Assembly (NCBI RefSeq): GCF_964204865.1
Contig: NC_135257.1
Location: 6,696,001 to 6,760,000, forward strand
Source: Styela clava
Lineage: Eukaryota
Reading direction: 5' to 3'
DNA: 64,000 nt
Shown: positions 2,051-37,395 of the stretch, in pieces
How positions within the stretch are numbered: position 1 is the stretch's first letter
Layout: the number at the start of each line of letters is the position of its first letter
Position numbers and translations under genes: made by a program
The notes under the pieces: model-generated
The model's input: only the letters and a program-made list of their open reading frames with translations
The model's database searches: none
Told to the model about the DNA's origin: nothing

Positions 2051-5000
2051 ATGGAGGATACTGAAAGAAAGAAAACAATGATCGCAGCGCGTGAAAGAGG
2101 TTAGTATGGATTAGGCATTTTTCTTGCATAGATTAGAGTTATAACAACACATAACTCTGACTGAAATCTGCCCAATGGTTACTATATTGTGTATTCAATT
2201 AAAATATACGTAGCTATATGTAAGTACAGACATAAATACAAGTACATGTGTGCATATACATATATATATATCTTCATAGTGAACAAAAAGTGTCAATAGT
2301 CAATTATCAGGAAAAAAAGACTTCACTGAGAAACTACTCATAGCCTTACAAAATATATCGGTGACATATTTCTGTAAGTGTAAAACAATACTTCTGAAAC
2401 TTCATATATTTTTCGCTATTCGTCTTAATTTTGCCATCCCTATTCTTGCAGTCAGACAAGGCGTACGCCCGTACATAGGCAGAAAAAGTAGTGATTAACA
2501 CCTTTCACTATCTGTATAATATAATGCTGGTGATATAAAATCAGGCAGCCTGTCTATCACATTAATGCCCGTGTGTTAATGTCCTTATTTGCCAATATAT
2601 TTGCACATTGGATAACTGTGCTCAAATGTGTATAAGTGCCCTTGAATATTAATTTTTGACAACGTACAATGTGCGCAAGAACTTGTATTATAGTAGATAG
2701 ATATAACGTAAGAGTGATGTATATTTTCAGGTCCTGGGCCTGGTAGATATGGACTTCCTAGTACGGTTGGGTTCAAAGGACATGATTTCACAAAACATCA
2801 AAAGCCTTCGTATTCATTCGGAATGAGACTAGACAATTCAAGTAAGTTTGCTGTGTATTGATAATCTGGTTCAAATGACGAAATACTTTCGCGTGTTTCA
2901 ATGTACAAGATGCAATGAAAACTGTAACGTTTTGTGGTCCGACGAGATCATAATAAGGATCTACCATGTGTGGTTGTGCGTGTTTGGAGGAATAAGCATT
3001 TTAGCAAATTGAGCTTGTTTGCTGAAATTCCGCCTATTTGAACGCGAAAAAGCTATCTGTAATCGAATGAGGTGAATTTCGAGTGCTGTCAGGCCGGTGC
3101 ATATTGCCACATTGTGTATTATGCAGACATTCTGAATCTATAGGGCACCAATTGAAACCGAAATGCACCTTATTCTATCATATTGAATCACGGTCCATGA
3201 TTTGCAGCATTTACATGCGTGAACAAATGTACTTGTACGTTAAGTTTTACACCGAACCCCAAATCAGCCGTGTCAACTCATCAACGTAACGATCTACATA
3301 TTCAAGCTTGATTTTGGTGTACAAAATAAATTTAAAATATACCGAAAAATGTAATTGCGACCTCCCTTCAAATATAATTTGAAATAAATTGCTTTTTTTT
3401 TAATCAGAATGAGATGATTCCTAATGGCCGCTATGTTAAATTAATTTCCAAAATAACTTCTTTGTGAAATTCATATATGGGATAATAGACCACACCACCG
3501 ATATCTAATATGTATTTAAATTTGGATTCAGCATTTGTTTATTATAACAAATGTCGTCTCGATCGAAACAGTTTTATGTTATTGGAGTCTGCCAACGTTT
3601 AATGGCGTACCTCATAAATGGCCATTGTAAATTGGCTTTCAATGTCCTTGAGGTAACAATGAGCGAAGTTCAATTGTGCGTTTACTTGGAATTTAAGGAT
3701 TATTAAAGAAACGTAGAAAATTATCTTTTGTAAATCACTTCTCAAAAGACAAGCCCATTGAACGGATTACACTATAACGTCTAAACGAGCTAATTTAAGT
3801 AATCGGAATAATCTAAAGAGACTTTCAAGTAGGGCCTGAAACTACTAAAGTTAGCTTTCAATTGAAGTCACGTTTGGGTAATATGAGATGTTCTAAAGTG
3901 TCCTCGACTTAATGATTTAAGTCAGCAGGGCCAAAAATTTTATTTGCAACAAGAATGCAGATGCCAAGTAAAGAACACTTAACAGATCCGTTTTCTCGTC
4001 TGGGTTTTATTTACAATTATGGAGTTAGTAACATGGCTAAAAACAAGCCTAGAAGCTAATTTACTCGAAATACCAAAATTTTTTAATATATACCTCGTAC
4101 AATTCGATGATGATTTTGGATATGTACCTAACGTTATAACTTGTTCGTAACCATTCACAAATGTAAAATCTTAGTAATTTTGTGGATGATTAACGACTAT
4201 CGCAACCACTTCGTGTAAATATATTTTAATTTCATATTGTGTGTGTGTTGGGACTGAGCAAACACAATAACGAAATAACTTTACTATGAAGAAATGTATA
4301 ATCTTCATAACATTCAGGCTGCCAAAACACGTGAATTTCACTCTCGCCATAATAAATTGGGTTAAATAAATGAACTGAACGGAATTTTTGTACTATCCCT
4401 CACTAATACGCAGCAAAATTGTAATGAACTATATGCGCGCATGTTAATACTTTCAGTTGTATCTGATAAGTCTTATCGTAATAGCATAATATTATTTACT
4501 CAAGGCAGGCCACTTCAATTATCGCAAAAAGCATGTCCGGTCTTTCATTGGTACTACATTGTTTGGAAACAATAAATTATGTGATCGTCAGGTAACCTTG
4601 CGCAAACAGCAACCGTATTTTTATCTAAACCTTCTCGTAACATTACTGAATCGTAAGTTATTGAAGAGTTCCAAAATCGGTGATATTTTTTTCATTATAT
4701 ATAACAGTGTTCTCTAAGGATGTAAGTCCTGGACCAAAATACCTGATAGAATCACGTTATACAAGGCATGGACCGGAAGGCGAACCTAAATATTCGATGC
4801 TTGCAAGACAGCCAGAATTAAGTAAGTGAATTTCCAAGTAAAACGAATAATGAAAAGCAATCTGCAATTCTTTTAGTAAGAAATAATCTCCTGTACAGTA
4901 GTGTTTATCATAGATGTGCTGCGCCTTTAATCAGTAGCATATTGTCATGATATTATTAAAATTAGAACTAGCAATATTTGGATAAAACTGGACATAAAAT

Positions 5001-6156
5001 TATTTGTTCTATACAACATGCTCGAGAATATTAGCAATACCATTTAGTCCCAGTTTCGTTGTGAGCTAAAAAAAAATTTTTTTACGGCATATTCCTACAA
5101 AAAAGATCATATTTATTACCTCTTGTCAATATACCCGCCATTTATTCCAATAAGCAAACACGCAACAAATTGCGTTAGTGATTAACACTGTTTACTGTTA
5201 TGGGAGAAAGATAAATCGTTGGATAGAACTCATATTTACGGAAGACTACTCAAATTCTATGTGGTGTAATACAAAAACATTTTTGAAAGTTTTGTGACAG
5301 AACCTGTAGAATGTATGTATCACTATGCCTCAATTGAATGTATTTCATCAAACTTGAGTTCGATGTAATTATAGCACTTCAAGCCAAATTTTATATAATC
5401 ATTTTACAAGCATCTTGCATTTGATTCTATCTTATACCTAGATTATTAGTATTATGTAGTTATGTAGTCTCTAATCAAGCATTCTGTTTTTTCATTTTCT
5501 CAACTTTCAATCTGCATCGTTGTTGCGTCAACTTCATCATCATGAAATCATCTCATCTTCTCGGTGTTCTGGTTTTGATTATTCCAATCGCATTTTCTTC
5601 ATTTTTATTTTCTTTGCTATTTTTATTTTATTCTTTACACAATGGTTATTTCATTGCATTATTTCACAAAAAAGGGGGTTTTAAAACACCTGGCCCGGGC
5701 ACATATGACAATCAACGGGTGCATCCCCAGGGTGAAAGACACGCCCCTAAGTATTCCATGTCTATGCGCACACGATTTAGGAAGCGAGATGCAAATCCAG
5801 CTCCCAATGCGTATTCCTTACCCCAACTAGTAGGACCCAGGGTAATCAATAAAAATGCAAGTTCAGCTTACTCCATGACAGGGCGTTCTAAAATTAACGG
5901 ATTTGATGAAGATTTGGCCCGAACCCCGGGCCCAGCGAAATACGATGTTACTAGTCCCAATGTAAGCCGAACAAAACAACCCCTTTATTCCATGCTAGGG
6001 CGAAACGAAATGCCTGGCGATAATACCCGAAAACCTGGTCCCGGTGCTCACTCTCCAGAAAAGGTATACATGAATAAAACCAGAGCTCCAGCATGTTCGA
6101 TAGGCATCCGGCATTCCGAATTTATTACTCCTCTGATCATAGACGTTCTTGACTGA
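2051..6156 (+). CDS. ODF3: Outer dense fiber protein 3 / SHIPPO-1 / CIMAP1-like protein (PGP repeats), isoform with proximal last exon
   Basis: Exons 2051-2099 (MEDTERKKTMIAARER), 2731-2841 (GPGPGRYGLPSTVGFKGHDFTKHQKPSYSFG), 4708-4821 (SPGPKYLIESRYTRHGPEGEPKYSM) and 5675-6156 (TPGPGTY...TPGPAKY...KPGPGAH...GIRHSEFITPLIIDVLD*). All introns are GT-AG and phase 1. Repeated PGPG-x-Y motifs. Confidence 0.9.
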
Positions 6157-8137
6157 TGTGCATTTTTATGCCATTTCGAAAAACAGGGTTGTGTTGACCA
6201 AACAAAAATTTAACGATTGTGAAAAGAAAAGTTAGTGATATGTAAATTTTCGTATTTTCGTATGTAAAATCTCGTATTTTTCAAAAAAACTATTAAATTA
6301 TAATATTATCAAGTGTTTGAAATTATGTTTTGATACCTCTAAAATAGTGATTTTTTTTTTTATAATTTTAAATAAGTATCAAACCCTATGCCCTTAGCGT
6401 TAAACACGAGTTAAGTTATAAGAATGGTCTTATGGCAATGTTCTTTAGGAACTAATGTAAAACATTTACAAAATTTATCATTTGAAATTAAGATTGCTGT
6501 AATAATAATTTATAAACATTTTTTCTTTTGAATGCACTTAGCCGTCCATGACCAAAAGCCATACCTTTTCACCATTGAGATTCATTTCCATATTTAAAAA
6601 AAATTAAGCCGTACATAATTATCGTGGGTGGAATTTTATCAAGATTAATCCGCCCATTAGTAGAATTTTGATTGGCCTCCAATTTTGAGCCAGATACAAA
6701 ATGTATATCCGAATTGAATACTTTATAGTGTCCGTCTTGTTCATATTAACCGTCCATACATTGTAAACTTTATATAACAGAATTTTTATAGTTGTTTCAT
6801 GTATAGTATGTTTCACTTTTCTTAGTGGTCCTTATACTTTGACTTAGCTGAATGTTTGTCCGACTTTATTAGAATATTATCATCTACAATGAAATTTTTT
6901 CTTTGTGAAAAATAAAATATTTCTTCTCCATCGAAGTACGTTGCTGATCATTTTATTTTTTTTTGCATGCTAATAAATTTTATCAAGCTTCGTTGAACTT
7001 TATGTAACTGCTGATTTACATATGGCGTTAGAATAGCTATCATAACATTGTTAGTGCAATTAGTTTAATTAGTTCTGTCTATTATAGAAAAAGTAGAAGC
7101 GTAGTTTTCGAAATTGTGACTTGCCAGTACAGGACACAGAATCATTCGATATATTATCTTTGCAACCAATGTTTTTCCCAATTTTGAAATATAAGAAGTT
7201 GAATTTTTCAATGTGACTCGGAATCAAAGGTCGATAGCCTACTGGACCCAATAAGCTTAATCCAAGAAGCCAGCCGTGGCCTTGGGAAATCATTACCCGC
7301 GATGATGAGATCGATCATTGGTACCTGAGCGCATATTATATATATATATCTATGAGTCTGTACGTGAGTTTGTCTGAGTCTGTACATGAGTCTGTACAAG
7401 ATCTATATTGTTTATTCTCAATTAGGTTCTCGGAATTAGATGAGCATAGCATTACGAAATGTGAATTTCATGCATCACATAAATCGGGAGCATTTCAGAT
7501 TTAATTTGAAGGTTTGTCCAAATTTGTCAAAGTTGTCCAATATGTATTATATCATTATTCATTAGACGAGCACAAGAATTCATTCTGATTTTAAATTTTC
7601 CCCAATATAACTCGGGATAAAGTTATTCTCTGCTGGAAACACTCAAAGTTGGTCAGAAAAATTGAATCAGAATTTCATAATTGTACTATTCCCACTTTTT
7701 CACTACACAACAATCATGCACAGCATAATTAATGTGACATATGCGTCAATTTTTCGTTAATTATGGATCTAGCTAGATTCCTGGCAATCTCAAGTGGCTT
7801 GTCATTAATGCCACAGTAAATATCGGGAGGTGTACGGAGTTGATTCATATTCGTAATTAGCTGAGAAATCCTGCAAGGCTCCGATGAATGAAAGGGATAA
7901 TAAATCTCTTTATTGAACTCGAAGGGTACATATGCATTGTTTTGCTATTTTATGTTCGAATCTGCTTCAATTTTGGATTTTGTTTCCCTTTGGAAATGAT
8001 GTATTGGCGGCATAATTATCTGCCCGATCTTTACGGTCTATAAACATTCAAATTACACTCGATTTATCTCCAAGTATGTAACATTTGGCTGTATGGATTG
8101 CTAAACTCCAACGCTCATTTAAATATGTAGGATTTTG

Positions 8138-8365
8138 GGTGCTCCTGAAGTATGCGTACCAAGATGGAGAACAACGGAACGTAGTATGTGTGCCAGGTTA
8201 GGGTTAGGCACAATTTCATTCCAATTTCCTTATTTTAGTTTTATTACGAGTTCAGGGACTAGCCAAGTGTCTTCCGTAGTATTTGTACCCAAAATTATGG
8301 CCTAACCTGGTACACATACTACGTTCTGGTGTACTCTATCTTGGTACGCATACTTCAGGAGCACC
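8138..8365. mobile_element. MITE, 228 bp, long TIRs, 8-bp TSD
   Basis: About 65-bp imperfect TIRs (GGTGCTCCTGAAGTATGCGTACCAAGAT... / ...ATCTTGGTACGCATACTTCAGGAGCACC). Perfect TSD GGATTTTG at 8130-8137 and 8366-8373. GG...CC ends; superfamily uncertain (Merlin- or MULE-like). Confidence 0.85.
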
Positions 8366-8756
8366 GGATTTTGTACACGCTGTGGCAAGTTATGAAAACG
8401 AACACTAAGCCTATCAAAACGGGGTCATTGAATGAGACATGGGTCGTGTATTCACATTATGAGCTAACAATTTCAATACCGCTAGTATAGTACGATACAG
8501 TTCTCAAAGACTGTCAGTTCTATACAACTACCCACGCATTTCCATCAGTTTTTTCATGCATGAAGTTAATCGATAAATTGTCAAGAAACGAGAGAATGAT
8601 ACCTAGTGAAAACAAGAGCATAAGCTCGTGAGTTGTGACCCTCGGGTGACCGCCCTGTTGCCTCCAAGGGGGCTCAGTTTGAAGAAACCTTTCCCTTCTC
8701 TAATGCAAGAAGAATAGTTAGAACAGATTATTTAACAACTTTCATATTCTATTTAG

Positions 8757-9241
8757 GACCCTTTAACAATCCCGGTCCAGGAACTTACCGGGTGGAATCG
8801 GTGCATCCCCAAAACGAGCGATGCGCACCGAGGTATTCCATGTCAGCACGAACACAATATAGAAGATTTGATGCTAATCCTTCCCCAAATACTTACAAGT
8901 TGCCTAGTGCTTTGGGATCCAATGTACCCAACAAGCCATCGAGCGCTTGCTACACACTGAGAGGTCGAACAAGTGCGATGGGGTTTGCCGAAGACCTCGC
9001 AAAGACTCCTGGTCCTGCTGGATACAGAGTTCCCAACTACAATACGGTAAGAAGAGCAGCTCCTCAGTATTCTCTGAGTGCCCGGTGTTATATGCCGAGC
9101 GACAGTACAAAGAAACCGGGTCCGGGAGCTCACAATGCAGAACGTGTATCATACCACTTGAAACGCAGTCCTTCATTTTCTATGGGTATACGGCACTCTG
9201 AATTCATCACTCCCTTGATAATCGACGTTGGCTTCAACTAA
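8757..9241 (+). CDS. ODF3: Duplicated alternative last exon of the ODF3-like gene
   Basis: Acceptor ttctatttag|GA at 8756/8757 has the same phase 1 as the 5675 exon. Open frame RPFNNPGPGTY...GIRHSEFITPLIIDVGFN* aligns without gaps to the 5675-6156 exon (90/160 identical residues by hand count). No copies of exons 1-3 were seen between 6157 and 8756. Confidence 0.8.
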
Positions 9242-11437
9242 TGAAACTATTTTTGTTTCTCTATTTTGTCATTTCATCACGCACTTCGCTCAAATTTTAT
9301 ACAGTCAGATTGATACATTTAAAATTTTAATGCCTGCTGTTTATTTGCTTTTAAAGCCCAATATTGTGTCGCGTCGATGTTGTAGTCTAGTCACCCTAGT
9401 GCTTTTCTGTTTTATGCCATAAATCAACTGAACACACGAAATTCTGTGAGTAGATCAAGTGAAACACGTTTTCATGGCAAGGGGAGGCGTTCATTCTTGT
9501 TATATCAAGTTCAGTTAAACCGAACAAATTGAATACTCGCGTAAAAACTGTTAATAATCGAAACAGGAGTGAAGCATATAAACTACCAGTGTTATGAAGT
9601 AGGCTATGGCACTTTCATAAACAAAAGACCAAGGACAAATTAGACTGTTAGAGTCTGTTAGACGAAGGCATAAAGTTTAAAAAATAGTTCAGTGCGTAAT
9701 AAACTGTTACAGTTGTTTTTAATGTTTGAAAGCTGTATTTGCAGCAGTACGACTTAACCGGAATACCGGTAGGTGCTCGCCACTAATACAGTCTAGTGAT
9801 ACTGTAATAATTAGTTCAGAAGATCCCGTGTGCTGCAAAGCCACACAAATAGGTTCGAAGTTCACGATGCCAACGAAGAGACTTTTTTTAAATAGTGTAA
9901 AATCCACGCTTGAAGCAGATAAAATAAGAGCGACAAAATACAACGCTTACTCTTAGGACAGCAAAGTAGAAAGAGGTTGACACTGCGAATCCGCAGCATA
10001 GTTCATATATGCAGTGGTGGTTGGAGTCGAGTAACTAAATCTAACTGTCGGGCGAATTAGGGCTCCACACACCAATGCATATGCAATAACTAGACACGAA
10101 ATATAAATAAAATACAAAACAATAAAAAAGTAGGACAATTCCAGTCCCGCCACATATTTGTTTAAATAAAATTAACAGGTGAGATTTTTCATACATACCG
10201 GTAGAAACGTCTTAGGTATGAGACCAATCATGAAGAATGGTGACTCGCCTCTGGGGGGACTAGTAGTACAGCAATACTCACGCGCATGGGATTGCAATTT
10301 ACAGAAATACGACCCGGCATGTTCATTTTCAACGCCGTCCACTTAGTTAACTGCTGTGAAATAGATAAAAGGCAAAAAAGAACCTATATTACGGACTACG
10401 CACATGGCCACTCACACTGCATCTTATGCGATAACAAAACAAGAGAGCTACGCACAAATATATGGACACGTCATATCAGAGCGAATCAGTCCTTACCGGT
10501 ACCTTTGACGCTACCGGTACCCTCAAAAAAGTTTTGAATTTCCAGTAGCAAGAATTTTGCAGAATCAAAACGTACAGCCAGTCATGACACTGACTAAAAT
10601 CCGTGTTCCCATGGATAAAAAATAATACAGCAAAATTTTAGATGAAATATCAAATTCCATAGAATTCACGCAAAATTTTGAAATAAATAAAAGTAATAGC
10701 CTTCTAGCGAAAAAATTAATCTTTAACCACTGAAAATTTCAAAGCAATTGGTCCAGTATTCGAAGAGAAAAGCGACTTTTCAAAAACGTGTCAAAGAACA
10801 AGAACAACAACACAAGAGAGCAATGCTCAAATATATGGACACGCAGAACAACTCCCCAAAAATCATATGCGGTGACCAACGACTAACATACCGGCGGTGA
10901 CTTACCAGTACCTGTATCGGGGTACCGTGACGGTACAGGGACTGTCATATATATTTTAGGTCCTGTGACAATTGAAACATCAGTTGTAATATCTCGTGAT
11001 ATGAGTCAGGATCAGGTACCGAACCACAGTCAAACATTTCACATAAAAACGTTACTAAATAACATGCGTCAACTTAACACCACCCGAATCGGGGTACAAT
11101 TTTTGGTACAGTGACTGTCATAGTCGTTTAAGGCTGATGGACAATTCGACTACACGGACAACTCACCAGGCCTAGGGTGGTGTAGCCAGTCTGCGGACAA
11201 TTTCATTCAAACCGCTATAAAACAAAAACCAATATATCTAACCCGTTAATTTTTTCACCGTGGGTGCATTGGCGGCATTTATTCTACACGCTAAACCTCG
11301 TATTAACTTTCTACGACAAAGGGTTAAAGCTATACAAATCCCCAAAGTACGGCACTCGAAAGACGTATTTGCGACCACGGATTTCAAGCCTTGATCATCG
11401 TTTCTGCTGCGTCGAGACTATCGTATACGCAGCCATA

Positions 11438-32179: not shown

Positions 32180-34860
32180 TTATAATTTTGAGTATTCGAC
32201 ATCTGCTGGTGTTTTCTTTGCCATAAATGCTTGTGCTGATTTTGTAATATCTTCAGTCTGCAACATAGCTGCATTCCATGATGCCTGAACAGTGCAAAAA
32301 TAACCATACTTATCCAAGTACTGGTTTCGTAAGGAGTCCTAAAGGATCTACAGAATTTTCTCAATATATCGGGTTGATTTTTAAATAAAATTTCAATGTG
32401 TGCTAATGTTTCATCAATCCAGTGGTATTGTTGAATGATTCAAAAAGTTTGTCGAGATGAGTGCAGATTCCAAATTGAAACTTTTTTGCATCAGATTATC
32501 AAACATTGGCATGTGTAATCTCAAGGCACTTTGTTCATAATTATCATTATTCTGCAAAGGATAATTGGATATAACATTATTACATACCATATAATCCAGC
32601 CCCTCCTGTGTTGTGTGATCCCTTGAGTAATTCATATGTATTTTGGTGCTTTGGACCGCAACAGGACTCTTGGTTGCAATAAGAGAAGCTAATTCCATGG
32701 CCGCTTCCATCATAGAATCTTTATCATCATAAACTCGACTGAAAAATTCGCTTTAACTATCAATCCAGTGGAGCACCAGTAGCCCCAAAGATGATAACAG
32801 AGGCAGTAAGTCAGTAACTAAAACTTATAGCTAGAGGAGGAAAGCAGTAGTTACCTGACCAAACCTATCTGTTTGGCTTCATCTGCTTCTAGTTTTCTGG
32901 CAGTTAAACATAGTTCTCTTGCAACACTGTCATTACCAATTACTTTAGGCAGTCTTTGCAAAGTTCCAACATCAGGGGCCAAACCAACATCAATCTCCTG
33001 AAGTTGAAAAAAAAATATTATGACAAAAATGGAATCTCACTCCACCTGATTAAAGTCTCAACTTGCATTATAAGAGATTAGATTATGGTATTTCGCAGTG
33101 TTGTACATCAATACAGCCTATTTCAAGTTATTGCTGCAACAATCTATAGAATTTCTCATACTACATCAATCTGCTCATTGGATCGTTTTTTATTGGAATA
33201 TTAGCTATGCAGACTTCCTCAAAAGTCCCTGATTCAAGTTTACCCAACGCTATTATTCAGTTGTTATAAGCACCTGCTCAACTGATTTCAACTTATTCAA
33301 GCATCCTTGTTACACCTAGATCCAGCAGTACAAGGAACATTGGAATGAAGGATAGGTAGTTTGGTAAAACAATCCAATCATTCAGCTTTGGGGTGATTTC
33401 AAATCATATACATGCAATGTAAATTTAAAATGTTATATCATCACTTGTCCGTTTGTCAAATATTATGCGCTCCATATTGACTTTATGTTTTATGAAATTC
33501 TCAACATACTTTGGCTAAGTAATATGCATCTTTTGTTTGAAGTCTGATATCACATGCTGTTATTGCATCTACACCAACTCCGATACAACCATTGTGAACT
33601 GCAGCAATCACAGGCTTTTGGCACTTGAAATGAAAACATGCAAAATTATATCACTGCAGTAACGAATATACCTTAGCGCAGAAATAGGATTCGTTGGTGC
33701 AGAGTCTCACATCACAAGCTGTGATTAGATCCACTCCTCCACCCACACAACCACCATGGACAGACACCAGCACTGGTTTGCTGCACTGTATAATTGTGTT
33801 ATAAATTAAGAACTACTTTTGACCAAAAATGAAAGGATCTTTGTTTGGTATACAGATATAATGCAGTCTTGCAATTTACAGTAATAAGGGTTGCTAATGC
33901 CAACTTGCTATAGCCCTTTTTCATTGTACAAGTTAAGAATTGAAAATATGACCAAATTTTCATAACAGTTTTGTATAAGAACCAATTGCATTTTAGATCG
34001 AAAAATTAGACTTACTATTTTGCAATCAATATATTAGAATTTGAAACAATTTAAGACTCTTGTCAAAATTCTTTCTATGAAACTGATATCAGAAATAATA
34101 ATAACTAGTAGCCACCCACCCGTTCAATAGAATTGCAACTTTCTTGAGCGAACTTGATAAAACCATGTATTCGAAATGCATTCCTTGCAACGTCACTGTT
34201 TGGATCTGGGGCAAGTGATGATGCAGCAGCCATGAGGTCCAGACCTAAAGCAAGACAATTTCACTGTTACAAATGAGGAAGGAATGAAAAAACAATGAAA
34301 GACATATCACCAGCACCTGCTGTAAACATTCTCCCTTTTCCCGATACCACAATGGCTCTTACATTGGAGTCTTTGGCTGCAATATCAAAGCATGATATCA
34401 TATCACTCCACATTTGGTTGTTCATTGCATTCAACTTGTCAGGTCTGTAAAGAAACAAAAAGATTTTGGACTTAATTGCCCTTGATAAACTTTATCATTT
34501 ATATATAATCATTATAGACAAGCTTACCTGTTCAATTCCACATGAAGTACAAAGTCCTTTGGGGATGTTACAGCTAGTGTTTCAAACTTATAGTTGCCAA
34601 CATCCGCTACATTTGCAGACATCGGTCTGACAGCTAAACGTTTCATGGCTAAAAACAAAGAGTTGAGTGTAAGCCATATTTAAATTGACTATAGTATTCA
34701 TCATTCTTTTTAACTGCTCGATCTCCCATGATAATGGTTATTCATATTCATTCTCTAGGGTTCAGAAACGAAGTTTTTCATATGAATATATATATATCAC
34801 TATATTAAATTATGGCTTACCATTCATGGTCTGCGTCATTATTCGAGATGATGACAACAT
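32180..34860 (-). CDS. ECH1: Delta(3,5)-Delta(2,4)-dienoyl-CoA isomerase, predicted dual mitochondrial/peroxisomal
   Basis: Exons 34821-34860 (MLSSSRIMTQTMN), 34528-34648, 34317-34444 (RPDKLNAM...GRMFTAG), 34120-34244, [33672-33785 or 33510-33623], 32855-32997 (EIDVGLAPDVGTLQRLPKVIG), 32588-32738 (KSPVAVQSTK) and 32180-32284 (ASWNAAMLQTED...EYSKL*). Arg/Ser-rich N-terminus and C-terminal SKL. Confidence 0.95.
33510..33623 (-). CDS. ECH1: ECH1 duplicated exon 5B
   Basis: tttcaag|TGC...AAA|gtatgt, 114 nt, phase 0-0, CQKPVIAAVHNGCIGVGVDAITACDIRLQTKDAYYLAK. Confidence 0.88.
33672..33785 (-). CDS. ECH1: ECH1 duplicated exon 5A
   Basis: tatacag|TGC...AAG|gtatat, 114 nt, phase 0-0, CSKPVLVSVHGGCVGGGVDLITACDVRLCTNESYFCAK. 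Confidence 0.88.
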
Positions 34861-35237
34861 TCTGTATGTTAAGTTAGACAATGTCTTTGGCAATTACCTT
34901 GTATTTAATGGTTAGAAAATTGGCAAATATCATTAAGATGCTCACAAATGATTTGAATGAAACATATCAATATAATTGGATTAGGATTTCCAGCTTTCAC
35001 CGACGGGTGTCGATATATCCCAGCTTGCTTGAAGCAAGTGTGAAACACCTATTGAAGATATTGAAATAAATTATGCATTTATCTTACACGAGTTATATTA
35101 CAATTGTTTATCACAGTGAAGTTGTTATTATCTGTTGCCATTATAGAAAAAATTTCCAATGTAACACAACCAACAAATATTGATACTTTAAATTGCAAAC
35201 ATCAGCATTGATCAATGTTTTCACTGGGTACTCGGTA

Positions 35238-35531
35238 TTATTTATTTGCTTTGAATATAGTTTCATGGTGGGGCTCATCCTTATAATACTTGTTTCTCAA
35301 TGTTCTGTATTTTTTCAGCATATACAATGCTTCAAGCTCCTTTATGATGTAATCCCCATGTTTCAACAACTGTTTGATTTTTTCTGGATCTTGGACATCT
35401 TTGTTTTTCATGAATGCATTGTGGCATTTATCACGAAAGTATGTGGAACCGAGTGGATAATCCTTTCCCATAAATATAAGGTTTTTATAGAGCGTTTTCA
35501 CAGCATAACGAAGTTCCCTGGCTGATGACAT
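35238..35531 (-). CDS. ETFRF1: Electron transfer flavoprotein regulatory factor 1 (LYR motif protein 5)
   Basis: 97-aa single-exon ORF with LYK motif and the family signature [21 protein letters not shown]...[15 protein letters not shown]...[14 protein letters not shown]. Confidence 0.93.
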
Positions 35532-36864
35532 CCTTGAACTTATTCTTACATTATTTTAACAATATCTTATCTCTAAACTAAAGAACTTGCAAGACAAAAA
35601 CACCAAGATTATCCACAAATAATGTAATGATTGCAATTAATTTTCTTTTAACACACATTAGCACAATATCCGGTCTTCTTTATGTCACAAATAAATCAAA
35701 AAAATGATGATGCAAATAAGAAAATCTTTTTCTTGCTTTCTGGGTATAATTATAAACAAGTCACTAAATCGACAAAGAAAATCGAATATTCACACTTTTA
35801 TGCTGCTAGAATGTGCTTTAAAAATTTCCATTTGCCTCATAAATTTTCATCAGATGCATGGAGTAACCCCCCCACTCACTGAAAAAATCTGATTTAGTGG
35901 AATCGATAGCATTACAAAAATAATAAGAAACACAACTACTGTTCAACAAATTGCCCAGATTGCGCATCAAAACCATTATCTTGCATCAACACCGAATTTG
36001 CATTACCAAATGTAAATTATATATCCATTTTCTGTAAATTCAGCATTGCTGATACCCAGATACTTTGTCTATTGAACATAAAATGTGGACCAGTGTTACA
36101 CTCCAATAACAATTTCTGCAAATAATGATAACTTACCGGTATATATCATTTGCAATTCATGTATTTCAAGTATGCCACTCAGATAAATTTTATAAACTGA
36201 CAAGACAGTGCTTTTGATAAAATTACAAGCAACAGATATGGCAGGTCAGTGGTGGATACACAAGGATTTTGAGGTATTATCACGACAAGCTAGCAAATTA
36301 TCTTATTGACGTAAGTGCCAAACAGTACATAATTAGAAAAATTGTTTGCCATTTCAAATACCACACATAATTATTTTCTCAGTCTCATGGAAAATTTGTC
36401 TGGTTACTTGGCAAAACAAATACAAACGACTCGTTCACCCAACACATATCAATACCATTACTGAAACTAGGTCCTTGTGATACCAACTGCCACACCATCC
36501 CAATTTCAATGACTGGGCAGGGAAGTAGGAATAGACCATGAAAGAAATAAATGCCATTATAATTCAATGAGTATCAGTGCATAATCACATAACGCACTAC
36601 ACAACAAATGCTCTGCGATTAGAGAGCATGAAGGCAGCTATACTATATTACTGTATTACGACAATGTGAAAAAAACAGCAAAGACGAATGACATTGATTT
36701 TCAGTATAAAAAGCAAAAGTCAGACACTGAAATAAACTGTATTATCTAGCATCATCGTAAGCAAGATTAGCACAGAATGAAATTTAGTTTGAGTTGGAAA
36801 TGCAACATGAACAAGTCAGTCAACCAGTGGAACATATAGGAAATAATATTAATACTGCAACATT

Positions 36865-37395
36865 TCATTCCCTATGAACAAGAACAAACATTCCTAGTAA
36901 TGCTAACACTGCATATTTTAGTTTAGGATAATCATTCATCAATATAGTCACTATCCCGACATACGGGACAAAACCCCGTGCCCTTCCCACGACATCTTTC
37001 CGCTCAACCCACAGTTGGCCGGGCTTATATAGTCCTCTATCATCGACTGAATTGTTGTCACCTTTGGTGAGAAATTTTACTTTGCCATCCTCCCGCTCAT
37101 GCACCTTTATGGTTCTATGAACGATTGGGATGTCACGTCCCTCAATTTTAAAAACAACAATTTCGCCTGCGCGAATTGGGTCTTGTTGGTAATTAGTGAG
37201 AAATAGTAGATCTCCTCTGTAAAACGCTGGTTCCATACTGCCACTCAAAACAACAACAATTGGACTTTCGCTGCCAGTCACAACCATCATTCCCTTCCAT
37301 ATCATCAGCGCTGAAGACACAATCATTCCAAAATTCAAAACTTGAAAATACAGTTGTCTTTTGTTCAATCGTCGCATTTCATCGATGTACTCCAT
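36865..37395 (-). CDS. SEC11: Signal peptidase complex catalytic subunit SEC11, intronless CDS
   Basis: 176-aa uninterrupted ORF from the ATG at 37395: [25 protein letters not shown]...[14 protein letters not shown]...IPIVHR...TKGDNN..DDRGLY...VHRE*. Catalytic Ser/His/Asp motifs are present. Confidence 0.96.

What the first reader, a model, noticed from the sequence alone, without database searches (positions are those of the whole stretch)
5675..9241. ODF3-like gene with two paralogous alternative last exons encoding about two-thirds of the protein
Seen: exons 5675-6156 and 8757-9241 both start in phase 1, align without gaps at about 56% aa identity, stay open, and end in GIRHSEFITPLIIDV. 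No second set of upstream exons lies between them. Inference: an old intragenic duplication kept by selection gives two axonemal PGP-repeat proteins with a shared N-terminus, for example sperm flagellum vs somatic cilia. This would mimic the separate vertebrate ODF3 paralogues through splicing.
Basis: partly seen in the sequence, partly recalled or inferred. Interest (0 to 1): 0.75.

Follow-up and report, generated by a model that had tools for sequence, protein, structure and literature searches.

The report
Sea-squirt cilia gene with two endings
A sea-squirt gene for a protein of the microtubules in cilia and sperm tails has two old, duplicated last exons, so it makes two proteins with the same start and different ends; this is real and conserved, but it is an ordinary kind of splicing that automatic annotation already holds.

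Summary
The window is Styela clava (names).

**Gene model.** The + strand carries a CIMAP1/ODF3-family gene:
- exon 1: 2051-2099
- exon 2: 2731-2841
- exon 3: 4708-4821
- last exon: either A (5675-6156) or B (8757-9241)

**The two last exons.** They are 57% identical over 156 aa with no gaps. Both have SHIPPO repeats.

**Splicing evidence.** Spliced contigs of public runs join 4821 to 5675 in 4 of 4 runs and 4821 to 8757 in 3 of 4, both GT..AG. RefSeq-type proteins for both forms exist, P0024 and P0001.

**Conservation.**
- Three unnamed relatives show the same pairs: identical N-terminus with an A-type or a B-type end.
- Clavelina has a B-type protein.
- A and B form separate, fully supported tunicate clades.
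- Both are under purifying selection, and B evolves about twice as fast.

**Extras.**
- A ~195-nt AG-free zone lies before exon A and is conserved in another tunicate.
- An intronless, A-derived paralogue lies on another contig.

**Untested.** The split between sperm and somatic cilia.

**Verdict.** New member of a known kind; modest interest.

The parts
2051..2099 (+). Exon 1, coding part (ATG at 2051; 16 codons plus 1 base; donor GT at 2100). The 5' UTR and transcription start were not determined.
   Evidence: Sequence read. It encodes MEDTERKKTMIAARER, the start of P0001 and P0024.
2731..2841 (+). Exon 2 (111 nt, phase 1 to phase 1), first SHIPPO-type PGPG repeat.
   Evidence: Its last 30 letters are the loose end in front of 4708 in the exon-3 contigs of X1, X5 and X3 (table 7).
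4708..4821 (+). Exon 3 (114 nt, phase 1 to phase 1). Its donor at 4821|GT is shared by both last exons.
   Evidence: One contig covers 4708-4822 in each of the 4 runs (table 8).
5479..5672 (+). AG-free, T-rich zone (about 195 nt, 50% T) before the acceptor of exon A. It implies a distant branch point. The acceptor context cacaaaaaag|G is purine-rich and looks weak.
   Evidence: the previous AG is at 5478, and this is the longest of 3126 AG-free gaps on the + strand of the window. The A acceptor of another tunicate (L012) has a 208-nt AG-free zone.
5675..6156 (+). Proximal last exon A, coding part (160 codons, stop TGA 6154-6156). It is the conservative, ancestral-like form.
   Evidence: The joint 4821>5675 (GT..AG) is seen in 4 of 4 runs.
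6157..7331 (+). 3' UTR of the A form. Contigs run on from the A coding part to 6925, 6972, 7160 or 7331, depending on the run. True RNA ends are not shown by contigs.
   Evidence: table 8, records 5, 11, 21 and 27.
8757..9241 (+). Distal last exon B, coding part (161 codons, stop TAA 9239-9241). It is the faster-evolving, tunicate-specific form. Its acceptor ttcatattctatttag|G is pyrimidine-rich.
   Evidence: The joint 4821>8757 (GT..AG) is seen in 3 of 4 runs. P0001 is 100% identical over the exon.
9242..9548 (+). 3' UTR of the B form. Contigs run to 9434, 9441 or 9548.
   Evidence: table 8, records 7, 16 and 23.

Best explanation
This is one Styela clava gene of the CIMAP1/ODF3 family, whose members are SHIPPO-repeat proteins of axonemal doublet microtubules. 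It has three shared 5' coding exons and two tandemly duplicated alternative last exons. Each last exon encodes the C-terminal about 160 of about 251 residues and carries its own stop codon and 3' UTR.

Shown: the exon-3 donor is spliced either to the proximal exon A or to the distal exon B. This gives two proteins with identical residues 1-92 and ends that are 57% identical.

Inferred mechanism: splice-site and terminal-exon choice. Exon A comes first in the transcript but has a weak, purine-rich acceptor behind a ~195-nt AG-free zone, which implies a distant branch point. It can therefore be passed over. Its poly(A) sites then stay intronic, and the strong acceptor of B is used.

History, inferred from trees: the last exon duplicated in the tunicate stem. 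A kept the ancestral sequence and B diverged. Later an A-form mRNA was copied back into the genome as an intronless paralogue. All three lineages predate the split of Styela (Stolidobranchia) and Clavelina (Aplousobranchia).

What the two forms do differently is not shown. My guess, at about even odds, is use in different ciliated cell types or stages.
For: Sequence and family:
- Anatomy and phases were read.
- A and B are 57% identical with no gaps, and both match SHIPPO-rpt.
- P0024 aligns end to end with ODF3/CIMAP1 chains of solved sperm doublet microtubules: 8snb at E 1.4e-96, also 8iyj and 8otz.

Splicing:
- Joint 4821>5675 is seen in 4 of 4 runs and 4821>8757 in 3 of 4, both GT..AG. Each A or B contig starts with 29 letters of exon 3. 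No A-to-B joint is listed.
- The depth of the exon-3 contig is near the sum of A and B in 3 of the 4 runs (the tool warns that depth is crude): X1 385.8 against 138.2+252, X5 415.3 against 340.8+113.8, X6 40.2 against 48.1+0. X3 fits less well (327.5 against 69.5+175.2).
- Database models exist for both forms: P0001 ('CIMAP1A-like isoform X1', B) and P0024 ('ODF3-like', A).

Conservation:
- Three further unnamed species have pairs with an identical N-terminus and an A-type or B-type end. The pairs diverge at the same codon, and the residues there are compatible with a shared first base A.
- A-type and B-type single-exon ORFs lie on ENA contigs of identical length in three assemblies.
- In an unnamed tunicate's contigs, both exon types have the same phase-1 AG acceptor.
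- Tree: A clade 100/100, B clade 100/99, all 24 tunicate rows together 93/87, A plus the intronless paralogue 99/84. A+B as a clade without the paralogue has p-AU 0.025.

Selection:
- dN is 0.12 for A and 0.23-0.30 for B, with silent sites saturated.
- 9 of the 10 coding variants listed in the RNA contigs are synonymous: 6 of 7 in A, 2 of 2 in B and 1 of 1 in exon 3. The exon-3 variant at 4754 was re-read by hand, because the script's frame was off by one.

AG-free zone: 195 nt here and 208 nt in L012, against 30 and 41 nt before B.
Against: - The runs are only guessed to be RNA, and they are contigs, so they show no RNA ends, strand or reliable levels. Rare forms are dropped, so a minor trans-spliced or A-to-B form cannot be excluded. 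83 loose ends and 1162 contig pieces were not shown.
- B is missing in X6. This may be regulation or simply low coverage.
- In the one other tunicate with genomic contigs in hand, A and B lie on different contigs. No B lies within 3 kb after A, and no A within 3 kb before B. Linkage there is unproven.
- No A-type protein with Clavelina's N-terminus and no named B-type protein of Ciona turned up.
- The branch-point and weak-acceptor mechanism is inference from sequence only.
- The groups for the AU test were named after the tree was seen.
Confidence: 0.88

Rival explanations
1. There are two separate tandem genes. The 8757 block would belong to a second ODF3-like gene with its own promoter or first exons, or would be the downstream gene of an operon that receives a spliced leader at 8757.
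For: Tunicates use spliced-leader trans-splicing and operons (established knowledge; another note on this window proposes an operon at 32180-37395). ORF callers on genomic contigs list the B block as a separate small protein (P0003, P0006).
Against: In 3 of 3 runs that hold it, the B contig begins with 29 letters of exon 3 (joint 4821>8757, GT..AG). No loose end at 8757 is among those shown. No copy of exons 1-3 lies in 6157-8756. The B frame has no ATG before residue 27 of the exon. Full-length proteins with the shared N-terminus plus B exist in Styela and three other species.
Confidence: 0.03
2. One of the two exons is a decaying relic, and its inclusion is splicing noise without function.
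For: B evolves about twice as fast as A: dN 0.23-0.30 against 0.12, and a long stem and end branches in the tree. B is absent from 1 of 4 runs.
Against: Both frames are open, and both clades hold several species: 12 rows for A and 8 for B. 78 of 165 columns are conserved within the B clade. Third-codon positions are near random (33-34% identity) while the proteins stay 69-82% identical. Both variants seen in B are synonymous. B contigs are deeper than A contigs in 2 of 4 runs (depth is crude).
Confidence: 0.03
3. Both forms are real and conserved but are co-expressed in the same cells. They might occupy different sites on the same doublet microtubule, rather than being split between sperm and somatic cilia.
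For: Three of the 4 runs hold both forms at similar contig depth. One sea-urchin sperm doublet structure holds two different ODF3-family chains (8snb_5A and 8snb_1a), and the bovine entries hold three. So several family members can sit in one axoneme.
Against: X6 holds A without B. Vertebrate paralogues are reported to be split by tissue in zebrafish: hair cells, olfactory epithelium and pronephros, and testis (passage of PMC10299642). The tissues of the runs are hidden, so neither reading is tested.
Confidence: 0.4

Closest known systems
CIMAP1 / ODF3 family (CIMAP1A-D of vertebrates; Pfam SHIPPO-rpt PF07004)
   Same: Both forms are about 251-aa proteins made of PG-rich SHIPPO repeats. They are colinear with the ODF3/CIMAP1 chains in solved sperm doublet microtubules 8snb, 8iyj and 8otz. 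ODF3A is listed among the sperm microtubule inner proteins of mouse (passage of PMC10663601).
   Different: Vertebrates diversify the family through separate genes with different tissue use (passage of PMC10299642). Here two of the variants come from one gene by choice of last exon. In the tree, the vertebrate ODF3L2/CIMAP1D-type proteins sampled fall outside the tunicate A/B/retrocopy clade. The tunicate variants are therefore an independent diversification.
Tandemly duplicated, mutually exclusive terminal exons (for example Drosophila pip and PGRP-LC, as reviewed in PMC9013439)
   Same: Homologous exons lie in tandem, each with its own 3' end, and one is chosen per mRNA from a common upstream donor (passages of PMC9013439; here).
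   Different: Here there are only two copies. They are very old (before the Styela-Clavelina split) and encode two thirds of the protein. The competing RNA structures described for PGRP-LC were not looked for here. The visible feature here is a long AG-free zone before the proximal exon.
Exons with distant branch points marked by long AG-exclusion zones
   Same: A ~195-nt AG-free, pyrimidine-rich stretch lies in front of an alternatively used acceptor. It is the longest such gap in the window and is conserved as 208 nt in another tunicate.
   Different: The branch point itself was not mapped. The link to regulation is inference.
Retrogenes (processed gene copies)
   Same: The paralogue at G000:C2:11864579-11865043 lies in a single open frame of 286 codons (about 254 from the first ATG). 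It is colinear with the whole A form at 60% identity over 253 aa and lacks all three introns, and it lies on another contig.
   Different: It is ancient and conserved (78% to Clavelina P0027; clade of 4 rows, 100/98), not a recent dead copy. No poly(A) remnant or target-site duplication was sought.

Membership tests
CIMAP1/ODF3 (SHIPPO-repeat) protein family | Several SHIPPO PG-rich repeats (Pfam PF07004) above the curated cut-off | tested here: met
   A scores 87.4 bits and B 65.9 bits against a cut-off of 20. The 40-aa exon-3 piece alone gave no hit.
CIMAP1/ODF3 (SHIPPO-repeat) protein family | Full-length colinearity with family members of known structure | tested here: met
   P0024 residues 6-250 align with 8snb_5A residues 32-276 (E 1.4e-96). 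It also aligns with 8iyj_Y0, 8otz_A1, 8otz_A0 and 8otz_At.
CIMAP1/ODF3 (SHIPPO-repeat) protein family | Location on axonemal doublet microtubules | not testable with these tools
   Inferred from homologues only (PMC10663601 passage; Ciona sperm flagella proteome PMC4427456). Which Ciona gene 'ODF3 (TD11)' is may be in that paper's supplements, which were closed.
Alternative last exons from tandem exon duplication | Two homologous exons in tandem in one gene, same phase | tested here: met
Alternative last exons from tandem exon duplication | Both are spliced to the same upstream donor | tested here: met
   4821>5675 in 4 of 4 runs and 4821>8757 in 3 of 4.
Alternative last exons from tandem exon duplication | Each has its own stop codon and 3' end | tested here: inconclusive
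   Both stop codons are present. Contigs run 0.8-1.2 kb past the stop of A and 0.2-0.3 kb past that of B. Contigs cannot show poly(A) sites.
Alternative last exons from tandem exon duplication | The two are never joined in one mRNA | tested here: inconclusive
   No joint from A to B is among the 4 joints listed in 4 runs. Contigs drop rare forms.
Alternative last exons from tandem exon duplication | Regulated (tissue- or stage-dependent) choice | tested here: inconclusive
   B is absent from X6 and present in X1, X3 and X5. Tissues are hidden.
Retrogene (for the paralogue on contig C2) | Intronless and colinear with the spliced parent mRNA, at another locus | tested here: met
Retrogene (for the paralogue on contig C2) | Poly(A) remnant and target-site duplications | not tested
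   Not looked for, and unlikely to survive at this age.

The most novel reading that the evidence does not exclude
Tunicates replaced part of the gene-family expansion seen in vertebrates by an isoform switch. On this reading, the ancestral-like A end and the derived B end give two doublet-microtubule proteins used in different cilia, for example sperm flagellum versus branchial or larval cilia. The switch would be set by a conserved distant-branch-point acceptor. An A-form mRNA, retrocopied in the tunicate stem, would then add a third, separately regulated member. This would be a dated, three-way partition of one microtubule protein by splicing plus retroposition, held across ascidian orders.
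Probability: 0.35. Interest if true: 0.5.

Novelty: new member of a known kind. Interest (0 to 1): 0.35.

Why it matters
This is a clean, old case of a tandem duplication of a last exon. It does the work that whole-gene duplicates do in vertebrates, and it does so for a protein family now placed in atomic models of sperm doublet microtubules. A and B differ only in the C-terminal two thirds of the protein. They therefore offer a natural experiment on which SHIPPO repeats set the binding site or the type of cilium. The conserved AG-free zone gives a testable handle on how the choice is made. The practical weight is modest, because both forms are already in automatic annotation and the kind of splicing is well known.

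Tried and rejected
**Hidden second set of 5' exons.** I looked for one between the two blocks by protein search and by DNA search. None was found.

**Genomic loci of other tunicates.**
- The one metagenome scan did not return the transcripts of P0008 or P0042.
- It did give contigs of an unnamed tunicate: exons 2, 3 and A on L010, L011 and L012, and a B-type exon on L009.
- These contigs neither overlap nor show both exons within the 3-kb flanks. Linkage outside Styela therefore rests on the protein pairs and on equal contig lengths.

**Clavelina and Ciona.**
- A search with the N-terminal 92 residues of Clavelina P0009 found no second Clavelina protein with that N-terminus (1 of 47 hits at 100%). 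The 'isoform X1' implied by its name was not seen.
- No named Ciona B-type protein appeared in the 120 listed of 284 hits.

**Selection and type-specific residues.**
- The NG86 dS could not be computed because silent sites are saturated. Only the ML values and third-position identity are used.
- Only 3 type-specific fixed residues separate the A and B clades, so no clear 'switch' motif emerged.

**Literature.**
- No paper in the library holds both 'Styela clava' and 'outer dense fiber'.
- Of the 20 papers listed of 2,294 for CIMAP1, ODF3, ascidian, Ciona, 'alternative last exon' and SHIPPO, none is by its title or abstract start about alternative ODF3 exons in tunicates. I read passages of two of them. 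One search gave nothing useful on CIMAP1A location.
- I read passages only, not whole papers, of PMC4427456, PMC10299642, PMC10663601 and PMC9013439.
- Supplements were closed. The S1 and S2 tables of PMC4427456 might say which Ciona gene model the sperm 'ODF3 (TD11)' is.

**Steps not taken.**
Exons were searched one by one. Full-length comparisons used database proteins that the tools returned (P0001, P0024, P0009).
- I did not fold structures or run the large representative search, because the family was not in doubt.
Full report
**What is there.**

The window is from the sea squirt Styela clava.

On the + strand I read a four-exon coding model:
- exon 1: 2051-2099 (ATG at 2051)
- exon 2: 2731-2841
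- exon 3: 4708-4821
- last exon: either 5675-6156 (A, stop TGA) or 8757-9241 (B, stop TAA)

Every junction is phase 1. The last base of exon 3 (A at 4821) makes AGG with A and AGA with B, both Arg.

A and B are 89/156 identical (57%) with no gaps, E 1e-63. Both match Pfam SHIPPO-rpt well above the cut-off.

Nothing resembling exons 1-3 lies between the two blocks.

**Is B spliced to the shared exons?**

I laid contigs of four public runs from three studies on 4300-10000. The tool only guesses that they are RNA. They do carry GT..AG joints and leave most intron sequence uncovered or very thin, as RNA would.
- The joint 4821>5675 stands in 4 of 4 runs (X1, X5, X6, X3).
- The joint 4821>8757 stands in 3 of 4 (X1, X5, X3; not X6).
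- Each A or B contig begins with 29 letters of exon 3.
- In the 3 runs for which this loose end is listed (X1, X5, X3), the exon-3 contig runs on into the last 30 letters of exon 2.
- No joint from A to B is listed, and no loose end at 8757 is among those shown. However, 83 loose ends and 1162 pieces were not shown, and contigs drop rare forms.

The depth of the exon-3 contig is close to the sum of A and B in X1 (385.8 against 390.2) and roughly so in X5 and X6. In X3 it is well above the sum (327.5 against 244.7). The tool warns that contig depth is crude.

Contigs continue past the stop of A to 6925-7331, and past the stop of B to 9434-9548. Each exon therefore has its own 3' UTR. True RNA ends cannot be read from contigs.

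**Already in the databases.**
- P0001 ('ciliary microtubule associated protein 1A-like isoform X1 [Styela clava]', 252 aa) is 100% identical to B.
- P0024 ('outer dense fiber protein 3-like', Styela clava, 251 aa) is 99% identical to A.
- The two share residues 1-92 exactly, equal to exons 1-3 of the window.
- One of the two differences between P0024 and the window's A (R>K) is the G>A variant at 5840 seen in X1 and X3.

Exons were searched one at a time, and the full-length comparisons use these database proteins.

**Family.**

P0024 aligns end to end with ODF3/CIMAP1 chains of solved sperm doublet microtubules:
- two chains named ODF3 in 8snb, at E 1.4e-96 and 8.9e-66
- 8iyj
- three different family members in 8otz

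From recall, not from a call: 8snb is sea urchin, 8iyj mouse and 8otz bovine.

What the papers say (passages only):
- One paper lists ODF3A among the sperm microtubule inner proteins of mouse (PMC10663601).
- In Ciona, an 'ODF3 (Shippo1)' was found mainly in sperm flagella, with a little in branchial cilia (PMC4427456). I could not tell which Ciona gene that is, because the supplements were closed.
- Zebrafish paralogues are reported in different ciliated tissues (PMC10299642).

**How old, and kept by selection?**

*Protein pairs.* Among 214 proteins fetched, four species show pairs with an identical N-terminus and either an A-type or a B-type end:
- Styela: P0001 and P0024
- unnamed species 2: P0008 against P0042, P0190 and P0191
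- unnamed species 3: P0005 against P0198, P0201, P0203 and P0207
- unnamed species 4: P0184 against P0204 and P0208

The pairs diverge at the same codon. The residues there (R/R, S/I, T/N, R/N) all fit a shared first base A (my reading of the genetic code).

*Clavelina.* Clavelina lepadiformis (Aplousobranchia) has a B-type protein, P0009, on an N-terminus 88% identical to that of Ciona's A-type protein.

*Shared contigs.* A-type and B-type single-exon ORFs sit on ENA contigs of identical length in three assemblies: 1,200,817, 98,652 and 729,044 nt. I take these to be the same contigs but could not fetch them.

*An unnamed tunicate.* Metagenome contigs carry exons 2, 3 and A on L010, L011 and L012, and a B-type exon on L009. 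The phase-1 AG acceptors are the same. The two exon types are on different contigs, with neither partner within 3 kb.

*Tree.* I built a careful tree of 82 C-terminal regions. These were 48 named hits and 33 unnamed ones picked from the lists, less P0001 and P0024, plus the window's A and B and the C2 paralogue.
- A clade: 12 rows, 100/100
- B clade: 8 rows, 100/99
- a third tunicate clade: 4 rows, 100/98
- all 24 tunicate rows on one side of a branch: 93/87

The duplication is therefore tunicate-specific and predates the split of Stolidobranchia (Styela) and Aplousobranchia.

*Selection.*
- Against the unnamed tunicate, A keeps 82% and B 69% amino-acid identity.
- Third-codon positions are 33-34% identical, which is near random.
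- dN is 0.12 for A and 0.23-0.30 for B.
- Among the variants listed in the RNA contigs, 6 of 7 in A are synonymous (the seventh is R>K), as are 2 of 2 in B and the one in exon 3. The exon-3 variant was re-read by hand, because the script's frame was off by one.

*Which form is derived.* In all 3 columns where the two clades are fixed for different residues, A has the outgroup state. A is 69% identical to Nematostella's protein and B 59%. So A is the conservative form and B the derived, faster one.

**A by-product: a retrocopy of the A form.**

The window's genome has a further close paralogue at G000:C2:11864579-11865043 (63% to A).
- It lies in one open frame of 286 codons, about 254 from the first ATG.
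- It is colinear with the whole A form (60% over 253 aa) and has none of the three introns.
- It is 78% identical to Clavelina P0027.
- Its clade is sister to the A clade (99/84).
- Holding A+B together without it costs 5.35 log-likelihood units, p-AU 0.025. The groups were named after the tree was seen, so this is weak.

The simplest order of events:
1. The exon duplicated.
2. An A-form mRNA was retrocopied.
3. The ascidian orders split.

**How the choice may work (inference).**
- The acceptor of A is preceded by about 195 nt without any AG (previous AG at 5478). This is the longest of 3126 AG-free gaps on the + strand of the window.
- The stretch is 50% T, and the last bases before the AG are purines (cacaaaaaag).
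- The A acceptor of the unnamed tunicate has 208 AG-free nt, although the introns do not align.
- The B acceptors have 30 and 41 AG-free nt and a plain pyrimidine tract.

This fits a distant branch point and a weak, regulable proximal acceptor. If A is defined as a terminal exon, its poly(A) site ends the mRNA. If not, the whole of A stays in the intron and B is used. I confirm the observation, not the mechanism.

**Comparison and novelty.**

Tandemly duplicated, mutually exclusive terminal exons are a described kind, for example Drosophila pip and PGRP-LC (passages of PMC9013439). The protein family is well known, and both isoforms are in automatic annotation.

I found no paper on this gene's two ends in tunicates. 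One search gave 0 papers. Of the 20 papers listed of 2,294, none is by its title or abstract start about alternative ODF3 exons in tunicates.

What may be new is the dating, the spread across tunicates, the conserved AG-free zone and the A-derived retrocopy. I file it as a new member of a known kind with modest interest.

B is absent from one run and present in three, and the tissues are hidden.

**Limits.**
- The runs' tissues are coded.
- Contigs give no RNA ends or reliable levels.
- Unnamed proteins could not be assigned to species.

Noticed in passing
G000:C2:11864579-11865043 (-), locus L002: Intronless full-length paralogue, about 254 aa from the first ATG within a 286-codon open frame. 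It is colinear with the A isoform (60% identity) and is probably an ancient retrocopy of the A-form mRNA. It is 78% identical to Clavelina P0027. Two more full-length members (P0028, P0035) come from large ENA genomic contigs.
   Followed up: partly
window 8138-8202 and 8301-8365: Inverted repeat with 65-nt arms, 92% complementary and 98 nt apart, in the intron between exons A and B. RNA contigs pile up here at summed depths in the thousands with many different loose ends, so it is a dispersed repeat (MITE-like) carried in many transcripts. In another tunicate, the contigs carrying exon A end about 3.4 kb after it, which may be a similar assembly-breaking repeat.
   Followed up: partly
window 9737-9941: Contigs of X1, X5 and X6 cover about 9737-9941, with loose ends before 9737 and behind 9926 or 9941. 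This looks like an internal exon of another transcript just downstream of the B 3' UTR. Gene and strand were not determined.
   Followed up: no
window 5479-5672; L012 about 2795-3002: The AG-free zone before exon A is the longest of 3126 such gaps in the window. It is matched by a 208-nt AG-free zone before the A-type exon of an unnamed tunicate, whose intron does not otherwise align.
   Followed up: yes
window 4793-5694: Thin contigs (depth 2.5-7.9) cover parts of the intron between exon 3 and exon A in all four runs. They probably come from unspliced pre-mRNA.
   Followed up: no
window 6251-6266: A run of small deletions relative to the window, in the 3' UTR of the A form, is seen in all four runs. 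It lies in a short repeated 'tttcgtat' motif and is probably an allele or strain difference.
   Followed up: no
G000:C2:21866866-21867015 (L004) and G000:C1:8627280-8627471 (L005): Two more distant SHIPPO-repeat genes in the same genome have their C-terminal region split over several exons. The family therefore has at least four loci in Styela clava.
   Followed up: no
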